Source: Podarcis gaigeae
Lineage: Eukaryota
Assembly (NCBI GenBank): GCA_964106915.2
Contig: OZ066916.1
Direction: 5' to 3' (one strand)
DNA: 64,000 bases
Shown here piece by piece: positions 525-62,889 of the stretch. Numbering within the stretch: position 1 is the first letter of the stretch; each line of letters starts with the position of its first letter. The notes under the pieces were generated by a model, which saw nothing but the letters and a program-made list of their open reading frames with translations, ran no database searches and was not told where the DNA came from. The position numbers and the translations under genes are program-made.

Positions 525-1993
525 AGAGTGCTTCCTTCCCCAGTGTATACAAAATTGGGAGGCTGAAGCATGGACACAGCCTATGCCTCACTTACTTCTC
601 AGTAAATACGCAGAGGGTCACACTGTCACCCTTTCTTTGCAGTATCCTTGAGGCCCATGCAACATTAGTGGCTTAAAGTACAATGAGGTCATTCACTCCA
701 GCTGCTTTTCAAGTCACATTTACACATTGCTATACACACCAGAGAAGGGGTAGGGATATCTTCAGCCAATGCACATTATCTATTTGGTTTCCTTGCACCT
801 AAACTCATAGTCATGAAGCTGCCATCTGTGCATGTGCTGCCATCCACACGGACTGTCTCAAGTGTATGTGGCTTATGTTTTCCTTTCAGCTGGAAGCTGG
901 TTTGGGAGGAAGTGCACCACACAGCAGCATTTCTCAAGAAACAACAGCATAGATATGGACTGTGGCTAGAGTCATGTGCACACAGCTTCGGACTCCAGCA
1001 GTGGGATTACACCGGAGCCAGAATAAACAGTAATGCGTACACAGCCTTAGCCTTTCCTCTTATGTTTTCTGCATCAATGTCAGAACGCTTTATATGTCCA
1101 CCATTTCATGTGCAGGAAGAGTTCAAATGAGTTCGCCAACTCCTCTTTTCATTTGTTAAACAGGAGGGCTGCTGCTTCAAACGTATCATTTTTCTAAAAA
1201 TAAATTTTGCCCTCAGCTAACTCCACTATGAGCAGCATTAGCTGTGTGTGTTTGGATAGCGGAGAGGGCACTCATAATAATGGTGAGGGATCTTTCAGCT
1301 CGTGACATGGATGTCATGACTGGACCAGGGCTGCACCTTAAGTGATAATTGTAAATGGCAGTGACTACAGAAAAAAGGAAATAAAAGAAAATGACCTTGG
1401 TGGCGTTCTTGTTTTTGTTTTGCTTTGTTTTCTTCCAGCAAGAGTGATAATGCAGCATGCCTCGCTTCTTCTTTAAATGGAGCGTCGTAGCCTAAAATAC
1501 ATTCTCTGTCATATGAATATGCAATGTAAATGTTTTAAGCAGTTGTTGAGCGTTGGCACAGAGCTGGTCACTGGGAAAAGACCAGCTTGAAGTGAAGGGG
1601 GTTGGAAAACATGGCAAGTGCATCAGGAATTATACAACAGGAGGGGAAAGTGTCCACTGATTTTGTTTGGGGTGCTGGGAGCATCATAAATGAGCACACT
1701 TTCCTTGCCTTCAGCCATGCCATTTAGAGGAACAACTACTTTGGCTTTGAGTTCATGACCCTCCTGAACCAACAAACAGACTGATGAGCAGATGGCTATG
1801 CTGAAAGGCACCCTACTTTCTGCATGGGCTGAGCTCACCGCTGGGATAACTCAGGCAGACTGGGGAGAAGGCTCAAAAGGCTGTTCTGCAGACGCTTCCA
1901 AGGGCTGCGCCTTTCCCTGTTCTTTCAGTATGCAAAGTGGCTTTTGTAAAGCTCTCTCTCTTTCTCTCTCACTTCCCATTATTCAGTTACAGA

Positions 1994-2176
1994 TAGGTAG
2001 CCGTGTTGGTCTGCCATAGTCAAAACAAAATAAAAAAATTCCTTCCAGTAGCACCTTAAAGACCAACTAAGTAAGTTCTTGGTATGAGCTTTCGTGTGCA
2101 TGCACACTTCTTCAGATACACCAACTAAGTTAGTTGGTCTTTAAGGTGCTACTGGAAGGAATTTTTTTATTTTGTT
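1994..2176 (-). mobile_element. Penelope-like element (PLE) terminal fragment with inverted partial copy (fold-back), containing a hammerhead ribozyme
   Basis: Arms aaaacaaaataaaaaaattccttccagtagcaccttaaagaccaactaa and its reverse complement. Flanked by direct repeats ttcccattattcagtt(a/c)caga (1973-1993, 2177-2197). Near-identical to the element at 22918-23114. Confidence 0.8.
2082..2119 (-). ncRNA. Minimal type I hammerhead ribozyme motif
   Basis: Minus strand reads GUAU-CUGAAGA-A-GUGUGC-AU-GCACAC-GAAA-GC-UC-AUAC: stem I GUAU/AUAC, CUGANGA and GAAA cores, stem II, palindromic AGCU stem III, UC cleavage site. Confidence 0.8.
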
Positions 2177-3467
2177 TTCCCATTATTCAGTTCCAGAGCT
2201 GTCCCTACTGTTAAGCAGAGTGAAACTGCTGTCCCAGGTGCTGGCAGGCTGGGGGCAGGACCAACTGCTGTTCCTCATGAGTTGTTTCCCTCTGCTGGAG
2301 AACATATTTGTGTGTGGACATGCAGCCTACCCAGTCCACCTTAAAAAAGCCTGGAGCCCTCAGATGTTGAAAATAATAGTCCGATCATATTTTGGGATCA
2401 CCTAGCTTTAGGCAAAAACAAACTGAGGGAAAGGTTATCTGAAGTAAAAAGTGGGGCTGATGTGAGGCGGTTGTGACCATTTAAATTATCTCAGCAGCAT
2501 ATATTTTTTCAAAGGGCCATCCAAAAATCTAGGTATCTGGAAGGAAATTTGAAAACTTGAGGAAAATTTGACATTCTTTCCCTTTCATAGTGTCTTTCTC
2601 AAACTGCATTTACAGATCATAATTCATGCCATGTTGGATGGCATATGCAGACAGGCTCCTGTCACCCAACAGATTTGTGTCTGCAATTTGAATTGGAAGG
2701 GAAATGTTATTATGTACTGAAATGTCTGCTATACGATGGGCCAAGAGAAAAAAAAGCTTGAGAAAGATTTTGTCTAGGTTAACAACTTATTCTGATAGAG
2801 AAATCCTCTGTTTTTTATCAGAAGATTTTCATCCTTTTGTAGCCGATGAAATAGTACTGTATGCTTCAGTTACATGGAAACTCCAAGTGAACAAAATGGA
2901 AAGAACCAGGGCAGGTCATGTAGGGGACTCCTCAGCAGATAACAGATCTTTTTAATTAAGTTTAAATGGAGATTATATTGGGCTGGTTAAAATAACAATA
3001 GTTATATTTCCCCCCCTCTATAGTCATTTATGTAATGTAAATTTTATCTTTATTTTTTTATCTGGAAGTTGTCAAGGCCAAGGGCTACTGCAGCAAAGTT
3101 GACTGCAGACAACAGTTGGTTCTGCAAGTGGAAAAGAGAGGCACTTTTCTATGTCTGAGGCAACGAAATGTTGGACTGCTAGGTGTTTAGCTGAATGAAG
3201 TGGTAGAATCCTGAAGTGGTAGAATGAATCATATCAGTTCAGGAAGATCAGGCTGCAGGTGCCATTTCTGTCAAAAGTAAAGTAAGTTTAATGGCTGCCA
3301 TTGGGGTGTGGCATAACACAAAATGGCTGCCATGAAGGCATGTCAGAAAGGCTGAGCCAGTGTAAACAGAAGTTGAGCAAGAAAACCAAACAGTCTCTCA
3401 TGCATTGTGGTTTTTTGAGGGGATATTTGGTGAGTCCTTTTGCAGGTGCCATAGGAGGCACTAGACA

Positions 3468-16679: not shown

Positions 16680-18630
16680 GCAGCACGTGCGCAAGCGTCG
16701 GGTGCTGCTGCTGGATCTGCCTTTACGCTCGGCTGCCCAGCTCGGACGTGCGCCCCCCGCCGTGTTTAGATGATACCTTTATTTGCAAAGGCGAAGAGGC
16801 AGATCCAGCCTACCCACCCCCACCCCCACCCCTCTCCGATCTGAAACGGACATGTCTTTGGCCATCCGCTTTCCTCGCCTCCTCATTGTTGCACGCGCGT
16901 TACGTTGTTGCCAACAAAGGCGATGTAGCAAAACCACACAGAAGGGGGGCAAATGATCATAGCAGCGAGGAAGGAAAAGCCCGTCTTGCGATGTGTCACA
17001 CATCCATAAGGGGATGCTTCTGCCTGGCTTTTGCATAACCCTGGTTTGCCTGCCTCTTTTTCTCCTCCTTTTCCGAAGGAGGCAGCGCTGGAGAACGGGG
17101 GGGGGGGGGGCGCCGAGCGGGAGGGGAAGAAGACCGAGAGCCGAGAGCGAGCGAGCGAGGGGGCGGCCGGGGGCTCTCGCTGCCCTTCTCCCACAGAACG
17201 ACCTTCCCCGCGGAAGGCGCTGCTGTGGGTGCGCGGCGCCAAGAGGGGGCCGCGAGAAACCGAGGGGGTGGCGGTCCCTCACAACAGGAGCCCCCTCTGC
17301 CTGCGCGCTCCGTCAGCCTCGGCTCTCCTTCTCGCCCACCCCAACCCGGCCGAGCGGCTCCGACTTCCTCGGCGAGCGGGTCGAAACCGCGAGGCTTCGC
17401 TGCAGGGGGGTGGGGGGGTGGGAGGCGAAGCGGGAAGACCGCGGCGACACCAGCCGGCGTCTTCCACAGCAGCAGCAGCAGCAGCGACCCCGCGCGCGCC
17501 TCACATCACCACCAGCAGCCCAGCCACCCTCTCTCCCCCCCCCACCTCGCTCGGTCGCGCGCCCGCCGGTCGCGCGCGTGCGCGAGCCCCAGGCTGAGTC
17601 CTTTCTCTCTCCGTGTCTCCCTCTCCTGCTTCTCTCTCTGTCTTTCTCCGAGCCTCCTCCATCCAGCACCGGCGCCGAGGATGGGCAGCGAGAGCGCGCG
17701 CAGGAGCAGCCCCGGCTCGGCCGCTCCCCCCTGCGCCCGCTCTTGCTCGTGCTGCTCCTCTTGCCCCGCTGCCCCCAGGGCGGCGCCTCGGCTGCGCTCC
17801 CGCCTTTTCCCACCGAGGACGGGTGAGTGAAGGAGTGGCTCCTCCCTCGGAGCACCTGCTCTAGCCGGCGAAGGGGGTGGCGGCGGGGGGCGGGCGAGGG
17901 GTGAATTTTGGCGCGCTCTCGGTCTTCGGGGCAAGTGGCGGGCGGCTGCCTGAGGGGGACAAGTCAGTCAGTCAGTCAGCGGCATTCCTGCCCCGCAGGG
18001 AAAGGGAGCAGGCTCGCCTTTGGGCAGCCCCTCATAGCAGAGGAAACCGTCGGAGGGAAGGAGAGCGAGAAAGGGAGCCTGTTCTTGGGACGAGGATAGA
18101 AACAACAGCTTCCCAATCTCGGGTCCAGCGCCCCAGAACCCTCCAGCGTGGTTTTTGAATAGCACGTGTCCCTCTTGGCCTCTGGGAACACTGGGCACCT
18201 TCTTCCTCTCGCTCATCCTTTTTTTACCCATTTTGAGTCCTCAGCCCAGCCGAAGAGACCTTTCTCTGAGAGCTGCTCCTTTCCGAGCAGCTATTAACTT
18301 TTCCTGATTTTTTTGGTGCTTGTTTCGAAAGAGAGAAGTGGATGAAGAGGAGCTGTGGAGGTTTTCCCCCTCGACAGTCCCTTCATGCCCTTGCAGGCTT
18401 CTCTCCTTTCCCTCCTCCTCCTCCTGCTCCTTGCCGTACAATGAAGTCTTTAAAAGAGATTCCTGCTTGCCCGCTAGCTGGCTGGGCTCGCGCCAGGACT
18501 TCTCCACGGGAGCGCTGGACCATTCCTCGCGACTGAGCAAAGAATGCCATCTATGCAGAAGAAGAGGGCACCCTGCACACCTGGCTCTCCAGGGCTGCGG
18601 TGATGTGATTGGGGGCCATAGGTAAGCCGT
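16680..18630. promoter_or_regulatory. FUT9: CpG island, inferred FUT9 promoter and first-exon region
   Basis: Abrupt GC- and CpG-rich block in AT-rich surroundings, with GC boxes, an E-box CACGTG (~16684), G-runs, a (CAG)n tract and a CT-rich tract. It is the only non-TE CpG island upstream of the FUT9 coding exon. Confidence 0.85.
17450..17822 (+). other. FUT9: Putative FUT9 first exon (5' end approximate), ending at donor GG|GTGAGT
   Basis: Consensus donor GTGAGT at 17823-17828 inside the CpG island; the TSS cannot be placed from sequence alone. Confidence 0.6.
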
Positions 18631-22619: not shown

Positions 22620-22917
22620 GGATATGGAGACCCTCCATGGTCATGTGTTAAGAGTGCTTGGGAGTTCCATCTCTTTTCTTTGGGTGCTTAAGGAAGAAAT
22701 GCAGATATAATGCTCTGGGGCATGGTCTCCCCCTCCCTGCTCAGTCCATTATCCCAAGCTTACAAATGTAGCCTACATTTTCCATAAAGGTTACACCCTT
22801 CCTTTTCCCCTAAATATAAAACCGCAGAACAGTTGAGAAATCCTAAAACACTTGACAACACTTTTACAACTGTACAATAAAAACTGCAACTAAAATAATA
22901 AAACTAAACAAATAAAG

Positions 22918-23114
22918 ATAGGTAGCTGTGTTGGTCTGCCATAGTCAAAACAAAAAAAAATCCTTCCAGTAGCACCTTAAAGACCAACTAAGTTAGTTCT
23001 TGGTATGAGCTTTCGTGTGCAGGTATCTGAAGAAGTGTGCATGCACACGAAAGCTCATACCAAGAACTAACTTAGTTGGTCTTTAAGGTGCTACTGGAAG
23101 GAATTTTTTTTGTT
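22918..23114. mobile_element. Penelope-like element fold-back insertion containing a hammerhead ribozyme
   Basis: Long inverted arms centred near 23021; 13-bp TSD TAAACAAATAAAG (22905-22917, 23115-23127); same family as 1994-2176. Confidence 0.82.
23022..23061 (+). ncRNA. Minimal type I hammerhead ribozyme motif, sense to FUT9
   Basis: GGUAU-CUGAAGA-A-GUGUGC-AU-GCACAC-GAAA-GC-UC-AUACC; predicted cleavage 3' of C23056. Confidence 0.8.
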
Positions 23115-23178
23115 TAAACAAATAAAGCAATGGAATAAAACTGGAAAATTCACCTATGATTCAGAAGAACAGATTCCT

Positions 23179-28249: not shown

Positions 28250-28546
28250 GTTTTGGGGGTTTGTTCTGCTCTTATCTAATTTAATATAGGAAATTCTTAA
28301 AATTAATTCCAAAATTGGCACGTGGACTATTGGCCACAGTTTAGGTCACATCATTTTTGGTATTGCACTGTTTAACATTATTCTATACGATAAGAGTATT
28401 TTTTTGAGGGGGTACCTGTTATATTTTAAGAGCATTATTATTAAGCAGCATAACATATCCATTGCTTGTCATGAACTAGTTGGATGCAGAGAGGTGGTGG
28501 AAGGAAAGATGGCTTAGAACCCAAGTTGTCTTGGTGGGACAATGAT

Positions 28547-29003
28547 TGTCCAGAGGAGGGCAACCAAAATGGTCAAAGGCCTGGAAACGATGCCTTATGA
28601 GGAACGGCTAAGGGAGCTGGGTATGTTTAGCCTGGAGAAGAGGAGGTTAAGGGGTGATATGATAGCCATGTTCAAATATATAAAAGGATGTCACATAGAG
28701 GAGGGAGAAAGGTTGTTTTCTGCTGCTCCAGAGAAGCGGACACGGAGCAATGGATCCAAAATACAAGAAAGAAGATTCCACCTAAACATTAGGAAGAACT
28801 TCCTGACAGTAAGAGCTGTTTTACAGTGGAATTTGCTGCCAAGGAGTGTGGTGGAGTCTCATTCTTTGGAGGTCTTTAAGCAGAGGCTTGACAACCATAT
28901 GTCAGGAGTTCTCTGATGGTGTTTCCTGCTTGGCAGGGGGTTGGACTCGATGGCCCTTGTGGTCTCTTCCAACTCTATGATTCTATGATTCTATGATTCT
29001 ATG
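28547..29003 (+). mobile_element. 5'-truncated CR1 LINE (ORF2 C-terminus plus 3'UTR), young
   Basis: Open frame [44 protein letters not shown]...; terminal (ATTCTATG)n octamer repeats. Confidence 0.95.
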
Positions 29004-54203: not shown

Positions 54204-54657
54204 AAGCTGTGGAACTCAGGTAGCTGTGGAATCTAGTAAAAGCTGTTTGCTATTAAACAAGTTGGAAAGTTGAATTTGACACATTTTTCTGCTGCTGAAG
54301 TTCTCAAATTTTGTCCTACTGAGCCTTGTCAAGTCAGGTGAGGAAGAAAATTTGACTAAAATTGATTAAAATAAAAGGTAATAAAGCAATGTGCTAGCTG
54401 ACATATATAGTGCTGTCAAGCTTTCTGAATACTGCTGTCCCAAGACATTCTGCTGCCTCAAGCAGAGATGCAAGTGCCCTCTCCACCTAGCCAATGCTTT
54501 AAAAGTCTTATTTGCACCCTGCAGAAACCATCTTAAGCTTTTATCTACTCTCCTCTGCCTGCCCCCAACTTCAAAAATGTCACTTCACCTTGCTGTATGT
54601 CAGGACCAGCCCTGATTATGAAAAAAGAGACTATAGACATAATTGTTTGCCCTAAAC

Positions 54658-56073
54658 CAGTGTTTCCCAACCGGTGTTCCACGGCACACTAGTGTGCCGC
54701 GAGACGTTGCCTGGTGTGCCGTGGGAGGGAGGCGGGCGAGTCGGGCGGCGAGAGGCGGGGCGGCGGCGGCGAGCACACGCGGGGCGGCGAGCGAGCTCCC
54801 TCCCACATCCCATCGCTGCTCACTTCGGCCGGCCTACTGGGCTGTCACAGGCGGAAGGCCTGCGCATGCGCGAGGTTTTTGCGCCTTCGGGATTCCCTTC
54901 ACGCCTTCCTCCTCCCGGGTCCGCGAGACCGGCGTTGAGACAAAAACGCAAAGTTCCATTCAGGGCTCCCCTTTTGCCTCGTCGTCTCACAGTTTGGAAG
55001 ATAGCAGCTCTCCAAATTAATAGTCCTCTTTGAATAGGCGGGGCCTGAGCGTTTCACCAATTTAGGCCTCCTGCCGGGATGTGATATGGCTCCACCTTCC
55101 TCAAGGTGGTTCTGCTTTTAAATAATTTCCACCCTGTCACCATGAGGACTAGCGACTTCTTTTCGTAAAGTATAAAATCGCTGCTCCTTGCTCTCGTGAG
55201 ACTGTGTGTTTTAATTCGAATAGGGTGTTCCGTGTACATTTGTGTGAGCTGTGCTGTAAAAAAAAGGGGTCTGTATCCGTTTGTCAGTGGCAATTGGATG
55301 GCCGGATACTGCAGTGATGGAAAAGTTTTTGAAAAGAAAAGAACTGGACTCTGAACAAAATTTGGAGCCAGATGAGAGCCCAAGTATGAGTGGGCATGAA
55401 AAGAAAGCAAAGATGGTTAGCTCAAGCAAATTCTCTGGCACAAGGCAATATAGCGAAAGCTATATTTCATTTGGATTTACTTTCACCGGAGATGCAAACC
55501 AACCAACTCCACTGTGTGTGGTGTGTGGTGAAAAGCTAGCTAACAGCGCTATGGTCCCAAGCAAACTTAAACGCCATCTCCAAACGAAACACCCTTCGCT
55601 TCAAAACAAGAATGCGGACTATTTTGTTCGCCTGCGTGAAAACACGGAGAAACAGGCAACTTTCATGAGACAAACCTCAAAGGTAAATCTCTGTGAGTTG
55701 AGCTTTTCAAGCATGATTGCTATAAAAACTAAATACAGAGAGAGACTGAGAGCTGTTGACGAAGAGCTACGTGTGTGTCTTTCTTCGATTCCAGCCAGAA
55801 TATCAGCTTTGTGTTCAGCCAAACAGGCCCAGGTTGCGCACTGAATAAAGTATTTTATAATTTTTCATATTTCTGTTTACTTACTATTTCATAATAAAGT
55901 AATTATAAAATACTTTCTTTGTGTTTATTTGATTCCTATTAAAAAGAGTTACTTTATATATAGTCAATATAGGCACAGAGTTAATTTTTTAAACATTTTC
56001 TAATGGTGGTGTGCCTCGAGATTTTTTTCATGAAACAAGTGTGCCTTTGCCCAAAAAAGGTTGGGAAACACTG
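54658..56073 (+). mobile_element. Internally deleted hAT (Buster/Charlie-type) DNA transposon, 1416 bp
   Basis: Perfect 15-bp TIRs CAGTGTTTCCCAACC / GGTTGGGAAACACTG. Perfect 8-bp TSD CCCTAAAC (54650-54657, 56074-56081). GTGTGCC subterminal motifs at both ends and a transposase-derived ORF. Confidence 0.95.
55317..55844 (+). CDS. Truncated hAT transposase ORF (175 aa): BED-type zinc finger fused to the C-terminal hAT dimerisation segment; catalytic core deleted
   Basis: [12 protein letters not shown]...[28 protein letters not shown] (Buster/ZBED5-like CxxC...H...H) joins directly to [20 protein letters not shown]...KQAQVAH*. AATAAA overlaps the stop (55844-55849). Confidence 0.8.
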
Positions 56074-61200: not shown

Positions 61201-61778
61201 ACAACATACTGGAAACTGTTGGCACACTAGCCTTTCATGATATGCTATCGTTGTCCACCCATCTACTTCAGCAGAGTTTAATTCATTTCTACTAAGGCAG
61301 CTGCTTGCAGGAATATTGAGGGGTTGTGGAGATAATGTTTGATAAAGGATTTCCTTGCTTATCACTCCATCCATCTGACATATTCTCTATCCAAGGGGGA
61401 ATATGGGAAGAAGTAACAGTAACTTAGATGAGATGTAAATTAGATTCCAATGTCCCTTGAAGTATTGATTTACACTTATGGAAAGAGATGTACCAATTGC
61501 AAGTATAGCTCAAGCAAATATTTCAACTGCTTTTTCCTGATATTTTAAAATTTTTGCCAGCAAAACAACAACTCATTAGGAAATATTGGTGACTGAATTT
61601 GGGAAATCCTGCATGCAGAACAACTGCTCTACCAGTGAACTATTTATTTACTTATAGGATTCCTGAAGCAGATTTTTCTCAGATGGTGTTGTTCAACCAC
61701 TTAGTGGAACAATAATGTATAATGTATGACATTGTTACCATGGGGTAACATTACAATAATTTAACGCTTGATGATGAC

Positions 61779-61812
61779 TTCCTATTTCCATCTTCCCTTC
61801 ACAGATCAAATT
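61779..61812 (+). other. FUT9: Splice acceptor of the FUT9 coding exon (AG at 61803-61804; exon starts 61805)
   Basis: Polypyrimidine tract plus CAG immediately before ATCAAATT-ATG. Confidence 0.85.
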
Positions 61813-62889
61813 ATGACATCATCACCCAAAGGAATTTTCCGGCCATTTCTATTTATCTTCATTGTGCTGGGATGCTTCATGGCATGTCTGCTTATTTATA
61901 TCAAACCGACAAACAGCTGGATATCTGGTCCTATTGAATCAGCCAGCTCTGTTCTAAAAATGAAGAACTTCTTCTCCACCAAAAATGATTATATCAATGA
62001 GACAACTATTCTGATATGGGTATGGCCGTTTGGCCAGACATTTGATCTGAAATTCTGCCCAACATTTAACATCCACGGGTGCCATCTGACTACAGACCGC
62101 ACACTATATAACCAGTCTCATGCCGTTCTTATTCACCACAGAGATATCAGTTGGGATCTGACTAATTTACCTCAGCAACCTAGGCCGCCATTTCAAAAAT
62201 GGATCTGGATGAACTTGGAATCACCAACACATACTCCACAAAAGAGTGGGATTGAGCATCTATTCAATTTGACCCTCACTTATCGTCGAGATTCAGACAT
62301 TCAAGTGCCTTATGGCTTTATGGTAGTTAGCACAAGCTCCTTTCCATTTGAAATGCCGAATAAAGAAAGACTGGTGTGTTGGGTGGTGAGTAACTGGAAC
62401 CCAGAGCATGCTAGGGTCAAATATTATAATGAACTAAGTAAATACCTTGAGATCCATACCTATGGGCAAGCATTTGGAGACTATGTGAGTGATAAAAATT
62501 TGATCCCAACCATCTCCGCTTGTAAGTTTTACCTTTCCTTTGAGAATTCTATCCACAGAGACTATATCACAGAGAAGCTTTACAATGCTTTTCTTGCTGG
62601 ATCTGTGCCAGTCGTTCTAGGTCCTCCTAGAGAAAACTATGAGAATTACATCCCTGCTAGTTCTTTCATTCACGTGGAGGATTTTCTCTCTCCAAGGGAC
62701 CTCTCAGAGTATCTTCTTTTGCTCGACAAAAATGATAAACTGTATGTTAGCTACTTTGACTGGAGGAAGGATTTTTCAGTGCACCTTCCTCGATTTTGGG
62801 AATCACATGCATGCCTTGCCTGTGACCATGTAAAAAGACACCAGGAATACAGGTCGGTTGGCAATTTAGAAAAATGGTTTTGGAATTAA
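61813..62889 (+). CDS. FUT9: Alpha-(1,3)-fucosyltransferase 9 (GT10 family, type II Golgi membrane protein), single coding exon, 358 aa
   Basis: Translation MTSSPKGIFRPFLFIFIVLGCFMACLLIYIKPTNSW...EKWFWN closely matches the vertebrate FUT9 sequence as I recall it. It has an N-terminal TM anchor, the alpha-1,3-FucT motif FYLSFENSIHRDYITEKLYNAF, and sequons NET/NQS/NLT. The conserved start is the ATG at 61813, 8 nt after a pyrimidine-rich acceptor (ttcctatttccatcttcccttcacag|). The first 12 codons of the ORF-track extension (61768-61803) are intronic. Confidence 0.98.
   Translation: MTSSPKGIFRPFLFIFIVLGCFMACLLIYIKPTNSWISGPIESASSVLKMKNFFSTKNDYINETTILIWVWPFGQTFDLKFCPTFNIHGCHLTTDRTLYNQSHAVLIHHRDISWDLTNLPQQPRPPFQKWIWMNLESPTHTPQKSGIEHLFNLTLTYRRDSDIQVPYGFMVVSTSSFPFEMPNKERLVCWVVSNWNPEHARVKYYNELSKYLEIHTYGQAFGDYVSDKNLIPTISACKFYLSFENSIHRDYITEKLYNAFLAGSVPVVLGPPRENYENYIPASSFIHVEDFLSPRDLSEYLLLLDKNDKLYVSYFDWRKDFSVHLPRFWESHACLACDHVKRHQEYRSVGNLEKWFWN

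What the first reader, a model, noticed from the sequence alone, without database searches (positions are those of the whole stretch)
22918..23114. Intact hammerhead ribozyme, sense inside the FUT9 intron, embedded in a fold-back that carries its own antisense strand
Seen: 23022-23061 reads GGUAU CUGAAGA A GUGUGC AU GCACAC GAAA GC UC AUACC. This is a full CUGANGA/GAAA/UH core with a 5-bp stem I, a 6-bp stem II and only a palindromic AGCU as stem III. The preceding arm (to 23021) is the reverse complement of the ribozyme's 3' half and downstream sequence. The ~197-bp unit has a 13-bp TSD. Established: Penelope-like retroelements carry minimal type I hammerheads whose palindromic stem III is completed by dimerisation. 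Inference: FUT9 pre-mRNA would contain a potential self-cleavage site (after C23056) that competes with a ~90-bp hairpin sequestering it. The fold-back may be what makes a sense ribozyme insertion tolerable, or it could act as a conformational switch or dsRNA source.
Basis: partly seen in the sequence, partly recalled or inferred. Interest (0 to 1): 0.8.

Follow-up and report, generated by a model that had tools for sequence, protein, structure and literature searches.

The report
Truncated Penelope retroelement carrying hammerhead motif
This is a young 197-bp insertion of a cut-down Penelope-like jumping gene in a lizard FUT9 intron, with the family's usual minimal hammerhead motif and inverted-copy layout; it is an ordinary example of a known kind, and nothing suggests the host uses it.

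Summary
Window 22918-23114 is a 197-bp insert between perfect 13-bp target-site duplications. It has two inverted arms (74 nt, 99% complementary). A complete minimal type-I hammerhead core lies at 23022-23061 on the + strand, probably in the sense of a FUT9 intron.

The functional reading is not supported. The motif matches the minimal hammerhead described for Penelope-like elements (PLEs) feature by feature. The fold-back plus a 30-32-nt tail at one end only is the published PLE insertion signature. The Anolis PLE enzyme cuts and extends both target strands and starts reverse transcription at two internal sites.

A second copy in the window (about 1994-2176) has the same two ends but a different arm junction. 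Its hammerhead sits exposed at the hairpin apex. Masking therefore depends on where the junction happened to fall.

In this copy the hairpin (-136 kcal/mol) shuts out the ribozyme fold by about 35 kcal/mol. Published assays also found single minimal PLE hammerheads inactive.

Rfam hammerhead models do not hit. The scan has noted many such elements in this genome, and two earlier follow-ups reached the same verdict.

The parts
22905..22917 (.). Left target-site duplication, TAAACAAATAAAG
   Evidence: D2: 13/13 identical to 23115-23127
22918..22949 (-). The 'tail': the 30-32 nt AC-rich 3' extension, present only on the left (inverted) arm. On the - strand it reads ...GACTATGGCAGACCAACACAGCTACCTAT and forms a small stem-loop
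   Evidence: Alignment of the four arms; fold. It matches the published 30-40 bp PLE tail that lies between two RT start sites (PMC8557442, PMC11167929)
22948..23021 (-). Inverted 5'-truncated arm. It is the reverse complement of the hammerhead's 3' half (from the centre of stem II) and of the downstream sequence
   Evidence: I1 (74 nt, 99%)
23022..23061 (+). Minimal type-I hammerhead motif: stem I 23022-26/23057-61, core CUGAAGA 23027-33, bulged A 23034, stem II 23035-39/23044-48, GAAA 23049-52, palindromic AGCU 23052-55. The predicted cut is after C23056
   Evidence: Its features match the PLE min-HHR description in PMC4209133. No Rfam hit
23042..23114 (+). Direct arm, from the hammerhead's 3' half to the short 3' end ...TTTTGTT(T), without the tail
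23115..23127 (.). Right target-site duplication
   Evidence: D2
1994..2176 (-). Second copy of the same family. The complete hammerhead is on the - strand (2081-2115). It has the same long-tail end at the left and short end at the right, with a different arm junction. Flanking direct repeat: 1973-1993 / 2177-2197

Best explanation
The feature is a recent, dead-on-arrival insertion of the 3' module of a Penelope-like retroelement (PLE). That module runs from the hammerhead to the reverse-transcription start region. The PLE enzyme cut an AT-rich target on both strands, and each free 3' end primed reverse transcription inside the element RNA. One strand used the distal start site and gave the arm with the 30-32-nt AC-rich tail. 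The other used the proximal start site and gave the arm ending ...TTTGTT. Both cDNAs were heavily 5'-truncated, one at the centre of the palindromic stem II and the other just upstream of the hammerhead. They were then joined head to head, which gave a fold-back between 13-bp target-site duplications. The hammerhead is a passenger of the element and serves the element's own life cycle, if it serves anything. In a FUT9 pre-mRNA it would be locked in a roughly 75-80-bp hairpin, and it is the kind of minimal motif that does not cut as a monomer. No host function is implied. Shown here: the anatomy, the second copy with identical ends, and the thermodynamics. Inferred from the literature: the enzymology, and that a single motif of this kind does not cut.
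For: Anatomy: the TSD and arms. The four arms of two independent insertions share the same two termini to within 1-2 nt: long ...GCTACCTAT and short ...TTTGTT(T), 30-32 nt apart, with the tail at one end only. The TSDs differ in length (13 nt versus 16-21 nt) and are AT-rich.

Literature. [quoted passage not shown] PMC11167929: Anolis Poseidon cleaves and extends both strands, prefers AT-rich targets, and starts reverse transcription at two adjacent internal sites, in an AC-rich stem-loop, that define the tail.

Geometry: in the Poseidon_Ac consensus the hammerhead cut is at nt 29 and the RT starts at 111-118, which is +82-89 from the cut. Here the long end is +88-90 and the short end +58.

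[quoted passage not shown] All of these are the emergent features of PLE min-HHRs listed in PMC4209133.

Youth: a perfect TSD and 99% identical arms.

Masking is junction-dependent: copy 1 is locked, while copy 2 has its hammerhead at the hairpin apex.
Against: The window holds no PLE reverse transcriptase or GIY-YIG ORF. Sequence downstream of the ATG within stem II hits a stop after 9 codons, so the link to an autonomous PLE rests on architecture and motif, not on homology. The element is not sequence-similar to Poseidon_Ac (by eye). Rfam hammerhead models do not recognise the motif. Only two copies were available to compare. No RNA data were obtained.
Confidence: 0.85

Rival explanations
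1. One reading: the antisense arm is a selected mask or conformational switch. It makes a sense-oriented ribozyme tolerable in FUT9 pre-mRNA, or regulates cleavage of that pre-mRNA.
For: The arm does abolish the hammerhead fold at equilibrium: a penalty of about 35 kcal/mol and stem pair probabilities of 0. The motif lies in the sense of the probable FUT9 intron.
Against: Fold-backs are a generic product of PLE insertion (PMC8557442, PMC11167929). The other copy in the window has a fold-back that exposes its hammerhead instead of masking it. Single minimal PLE hammerheads were inactive in vitro, and the Anolis one needed its own protein (PMC4209133, PMC11167929). Published Anolis RNA-seq showed no read ends at the PLE hammerhead site (PMC11167929). 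The insertion is very young, so selection has had little time. A switch would need an alternative state within reach, and a 35 kcal/mol gap leaves none.
Confidence: 0.04
2. The roughly 75-80-bp near-perfect intronic hairpin acts as a dsRNA substrate (A-to-I editing, Dicer/Drosha processing, small RNAs), and this affects FUT9 or targets the PLE family.
For: The hairpin is very stable: -136.1 kcal/mol, z = -22.6. Rfam gives sub-threshold matches to hairpin miRNA families, for example mir-559 at 62 bits against a gathering score of 95. It is established that long intronic inverted repeats are common editing substrates.
Against: The miRNA matches are below threshold and reflect only a long perfect stem. 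There is no conservation and no RNA data. The same would hold for any young inverted repeat, so nothing about this locus is special.
Confidence: 0.08
3. It is a fold-back DNA transposon (MITE) that happens to contain a hammerhead-like string.
For: It has terminal inverted repeats and a TSD.
Against: The TSD length differs between the copies (13 nt versus 16-21 nt). The ends are asymmetric, with a 30-32-nt tail on one arm only. The internal junction differs between copies while the outer ends are identical. This is the pattern of retro-insertion with 5' truncation, not cut-and-paste of a fixed unit. The motif meets every PLE min-HHR feature.
Confidence: 0.03

Closest known systems
Minimal hammerhead ribozymes of Penelope-like elements (Cervera & De la Pena 2014, PMC4209133; Lunse, Weinberg & Breaker 2017, seen here only as cited in the review PMC6765202)
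   Same: Type-I topology, a short helix I (5 bp), a long GC-rich helix II, an unpaired nucleotide between A9 and G10.1, a G10.1-C11.1 pair, and helix III reduced to A15.1-U16.1 around a palindromic dinucleotide. It occurs mostly as single motifs in truncated elements, sometimes as two motifs on opposite strands 100-700 bp apart.
   Different: Nothing in kind. The paper reports these motifs in reptiles only for 'turtle and snakes'. This lizard family's sequence is its own; text searches for short substrings of the core found nothing in the paper library or in the Poseidon supplement.
Poseidon_Ac (PAc) of Anolis carolinensis and its in vitro transposition behaviour (Frangieh et al. 2024, PMC11167929)
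   Same: The hammerhead lies about 85-90 nt upstream of an AC-rich reverse-transcription start region. There are two start sites about 30 nt apart that define an optional tail. Both target strands are cut and extended, the targets are AT-rich, and there is little or no homology between the primer and the start site.
   Different: The sequence is not alignable by eye with the PAc consensus: stem III is ACGU there and AGCU here. In PAc the ORF starts at stem II, whereas here the frame from the ATG within stem II stops after 9 codons, so this family looks non-autonomous or is differently organised.
Generic PLE insertion architecture (Craig et al. 2021, PMC8557442)
   Same: Strong 5' truncation, an inverted 5'-truncated copy abutting the direct copy, and a 30-40-bp tail at one end only.
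   Different: This copy is extreme: both arms are about 100 nt or less, so the whole insert is only the 3' module.
Animal non-LTR retrozymes (Cervera & De la Pena 2020, PMC7229834; Li et al. 2026 preprint, 10.64898/2026.07.22.740005)
   Same: Non-coding hammerhead-bearing repeats, related to PLE pLTRs and flanked by TSDs.
   Different: Retrozymes are head-to-tail tandems whose two hammerheads excise a circular RNA. Here there is one hammerhead and an inverted arrangement, so no unit can be excised.
Conserved intronic hammerheads of amniotes (Rfam HH9 and HH10; cited in PMC7229834 as ref. 25)
   Same: A type-I hammerhead in the sense orientation inside an intron.
   Different: Those motifs are ancient and single-copy, with stable helices and loop-loop contacts. 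This one is a young repeat copy without helix III or loops, and it is not hit by the Rfam models.

Membership tests
Hammerhead ribozyme (catalytic core) | Conserved core C3 U4 G5 A6 N7 G8 A9 ... G12 A13 A14 ... A15.1-U16.1, H17 | tested here: met
   Direct reading of 23027-23056. The exact 35-mer occurs twice in the window and 0 times in shuffles.
Hammerhead ribozyme (catalytic core) | Recognised by curated covariance models (Rfam Hammerhead_1, Hammerhead_3, Hammerhead_II, HH9, HH10) | tested here: not met
   No hammerhead family appears at E<=10 on 6 kb or on 71 nt, and none at gathering score in 64 kb. My inference is that this is expected for a motif lacking helix III and loops. PMC4209133 needed a dedicated relaxed descriptor to find such motifs.
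Hammerhead ribozyme (catalytic core) | Self-cleavage 3' of position 17 | not testable with these tools
   It needs in vitro transcription or end-specific RNA sequencing.
PLE minimal hammerhead (min-HHR) | Type I, helix I of 4-5 bp with an ill-defined loop | tested here: met
   GGUAU/AUACC, 5 bp, open.
PLE minimal hammerhead (min-HHR) | Larger than usual helix II (6-8 bp) with an unpaired nucleotide at its 5' end, and a G10.1-C11.1 pair | tested here: met
   A 14-nt palindrome folds as 5 bp plus a CAUG loop (6 bp on paper). The bulged nucleotide is A23034, and G23035 pairs with C23048. Helix II is at the lower edge of the published range.
PLE minimal hammerhead (min-HHR) | Helix III reduced to 1-2 bp with palindromic 15.2-16.2 | tested here: met
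   A23052 G C U23055.
Penelope-like element insertion | Variable TSD, strong 5' truncation, adjacent inverted or tandem partial copy | tested here: met
Penelope-like element insertion | [quoted passage not shown] | tested here: met
   A 30-32 nt tail on the left arm only, in both copies, with identical termini.
Penelope-like element insertion | ORF with a telomerase-like RT and a GIY-YIG endonuclease, in this copy or in a demonstrable autonomous partner | tested here: not met
   No such ORF is among the 24 ORFs of 110 aa or more. Only four of them were scanned against Pfam, and none gave an RT or GIY-YIG domain. The rest of the genome could not be searched, so an autonomous partner is untested.
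Non-LTR retrozyme | Two or more head-to-tail units, each with a hammerhead, delimiting an excisable unit | tested here: not met
   There is a single hammerhead on the + strand and none on the - strand of this copy. The arms are inverted, not tandem.

The most novel reading that the evidence does not exclude
Among the many copies of this family in the lizard genome, the position of the arm junction (masking versus exposing the hammerhead) is biased by host-gene strand. If so, exposed sense ribozymes, or long sense dsRNA hairpins, would be selected against in introns. This would be the first in vivo evidence that minimal PLE hammerheads act on host transcripts.
Probability: 0.04. Interest if true: 0.55.

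Novelty: already known. Interest (0 to 1): 0.12.

Why it matters
It matters little for host biology, because it is one more young copy of an abundant retroelement family. Its modest value is as a natural record of PLE insertion. Two independent insertions in one window each pair a 'long-start' arm with a 'short-start' arm at nucleotide-identical termini. That is what the in vitro model of two internal reverse-transcription start sites and two-strand priming would predict (PMC11167929). For annotation, it shows that Rfam hammerhead models miss this class, and that such fold-backs produce spurious miRNA-like hits.

Tried and rejected
1. I take this as a limit of the models for motifs without helix III, not as disproof.

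3. Literature look-up by sequence: a 13-nt string from the core occurs in no held paper. Core and tail strings were not found in the Poseidon supplement, whose GenBank layout splits the sequence into 10-letter blocks. Reading it showed the same architecture but a different sequence.

4. Lunse et al. 2017 (PMC5785218) is not held. It is cited only through the review PMC6765202.

5. More family copies in the window: blastn and a relaxed min-HHR descriptor found only the two copies. Two other descriptor hits (21452 +, 52216 -) have weak stems and do not look like hammerheads.

6. Homodimer cofold of the 40-mer: the minimum-energy dimer is a domain-swapped duplex through the palindromic stem II. 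It says nothing decisive about an active double hammerhead.

7. MITE and retrozyme readings were rejected on anatomy (see rivals and membership test).

8. Genome-wide orientation or masking bias could not be computed, because no tool here holds this genome. Earlier scan notes list many palindromic copies, but these are unchecked notes and an ascertainment-biased sample.

Full report
**What is there**

The sequence at 22918-23114 is a 197-bp insert bracketed by a perfect 13-nt direct repeat, TAAACAAATAAAG, at 22905-22917 and 23115-23127. Inside it, arms 22948-23021 and 23042-23115 are 74 nt long, 99% complementary and 20 nt apart.

On the + strand, 23022-23061 carries every conserved hammerhead position:
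- Stem I is GGUAU/AUACC.
- C3-A9 is CUGAAGA (23027-33).
- An extra A sits at 23034.
- A palindromic stem II folds as 5 bp plus a CAUG loop.
- G12-A14 is followed by A15.1-G-C-U16.1, then C17 at 23056.

The same 35-nt core occurs once more in the window, on the minus strand at 2081-2115, and never in 100 shuffles. Stem II cannot be 6 bp with a 2-nt loop. The duplex has about 74-79 pairs rather than about 90.

**The proposed Rfam check fails**

No hammerhead family is reported at E<=10 on 6 kb or on a 71-nt slice. No family at all reaches its gathering score in the whole window. The only matches are sub-threshold hits to hairpin miRNA families, which simply reflect a long perfect stem. I read this as a limit of the models. 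The motif lacks helix III and loops, and the paper that first described this class needed a dedicated relaxed descriptor to find it (PMC4209133).

**What kind of motif it is**

PMC4209133 lists features that emerged in the minimal hammerheads of Penelope-like elements (PLEs) without being part of the search descriptor:
- helix I of 4-5 bp;
- a large helix II;
- a conserved G10.1-C11.1 pair;
- palindromic 15.2-16.2.

All of them are present here. The same paper reports that most such motifs are single and lie in truncated elements, and that some occur as two motifs on opposite strands 100-700 bp apart. It also reports that a single motif gave no detectable self-cleavage, while dimers cut only weakly. 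The review PMC6765202 summarises the dimer model.

**Why there is a fold-back**

I aligned the four arms of the two copies in the window in RNA sense, and one search gave the repeats of copy 2. In both insertions one arm ends ...GCTACCTAT and the other ends ...TTTGTT(T), 30-32 nt short of the first. The extra AC-rich piece is therefore present at one end only.

The outer ends are identical in the two copies, but the inner junctions differ. In copy 1 the inverted arm stops at the centre of stem II and the direct arm starts just before stem I. In copy 2 (insert about 1994-2176, flanking repeat 1973-1993 / 2177-2197) the long-tailed arm carries the whole hammerhead, and the other arm starts some 45 nt downstream of it.

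This is the published PLE signature. [quoted passage not shown]

PMC11167929 supplies the enzymology for the Anolis Poseidon element:
- Reverse transcription starts at two adjacent internal sites in an AC-rich stem-loop, without homology to the cut DNA.
- The tail is the stretch between those two sites.

In the Poseidon_Ac consensus the hammerhead cut is at nt 29 and the starts are at 111-118, which is +82-89 from the cut. Here the long end is +88-90 and the short end +58. The sequences themselves are not alignable by eye: stem III is ACGU there and AGCU here. In this family the frame from the ATG within stem II stops after 9 codons. It is therefore a different and probably non-autonomous family with the same layout.

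**Consequence for the RNA**

Folded as RNA, the 197-nt unit has a minimum free energy of -136.1 kcal/mol (z = -22.6). Forcing hammerhead stems I and II raises this to -100.8. In a 451-nt context the pair probabilities of both stems are 0, and 72 of 75 hairpin pairs exceed 0.9. As the transcript grows, the 3' strand of stem II pairs with the upstream arm as soon as it appears. The motif is indeed masked in this copy.

In copy 2, however, the minus-strand RNA folds with the arms forming a 49-bp stem and the complete hammerhead sitting at its apex, with stems I and II formed. So the same process gives a masked ribozyme in one insertion and an exposed one in the other, depending only on where the truncated arm ended. 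Copy 2 lies about 15 kb upstream of the CpG island that probably holds the FUT9 first exon, so the fold-back is not tied to sense-intronic location.

Minimal PLE hammerheads were inactive as single motifs (PMC4209133). The Anolis one cut only when its own protein was present, and public Anolis RNA-seq showed no read ends at its site (PMC11167929). Taken together with the point above, there is little reason to think the arm is a selected mask or a switch.

**Gene context**

The ORF at 61768-62889 (+) is FUT9 (PDB 8d0o, E 9e-200; Pfam Glyco_transf_10). A polypyrimidine tract and a CAG acceptor lie a few bases upstream of the ATG. A CpG island spans 16751-18250 and contains a GTGAGT donor at 17824 on the + strand. 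The element therefore probably lies in a FUT9 intron in the sense orientation.

**Earlier scan notes**

The index holds 209 notes with 'hammerhead' and 23 with 'hammerhead palindrome' for this same genome. Two follow-ups (s1-656169, s1-692057) judged tandem versions of the element to be ordinary Penelope-type mini-elements of a very abundant lizard family. Those notes are unchecked leads. They agree with what I found independently here.

**Verdict**

The element is a known kind: a young, heavily truncated PLE insertion with its family's minimal hammerhead. The fold-back is best explained as a by-product of two-strand, two-start-site target-primed reverse transcription. The functional ideas (tolerance mask, switch, dsRNA source) are unsupported but not formally excluded. 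A genome-wide census of junction position against host-gene strand, together with end-specific RNA data, would settle them.

Noticed in passing
window 1973-2197: Second copy of the same mini-element (insert about 1994-2176). Its flanking direct repeat runs up to 21 nt with one mismatch. The complete hammerhead is on the minus strand, at the apex of the hairpin rather than masked.
   Followed up: yes
window 16751-18250: A strong CpG island (GC up to 0.73, CpG observed/expected up to 0.94) with a consensus GTGAGT donor at 17824 on the + strand. It is probably the FUT9 promoter and first exon.
   Followed up: partly
window 54501-55844: A second CpG island (54501-55250) lies immediately upstream of a 187-aa ORF (55281-55844, +). 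The ORF has weak, below-cutoff Pfam matches to zf-C2H2_12 and zf-BED. It may be a hAT/BED-derived gene or remnant nested in the FUT9 intron.
   Followed up: partly
window 28542-28916: A 124-aa ORF whose sequence looks, from memory only, like the C-terminal end of a CR1-type LINE ORF2. Pfam gave no hit.
   Followed up: partly
window 22963-23100: The fold-back gives symmetric sub-threshold Rfam matches on both strands to TE-hairpin miRNA families (mir-559 at 62 bits against a gathering score of 95; also MIR5048, MIR1222 and mir-54). This shows how such elements can seed false miRNA calls.
   Followed up: yes
No run list and no read laying were possible, so nothing can be said about expression.
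   Followed up: no
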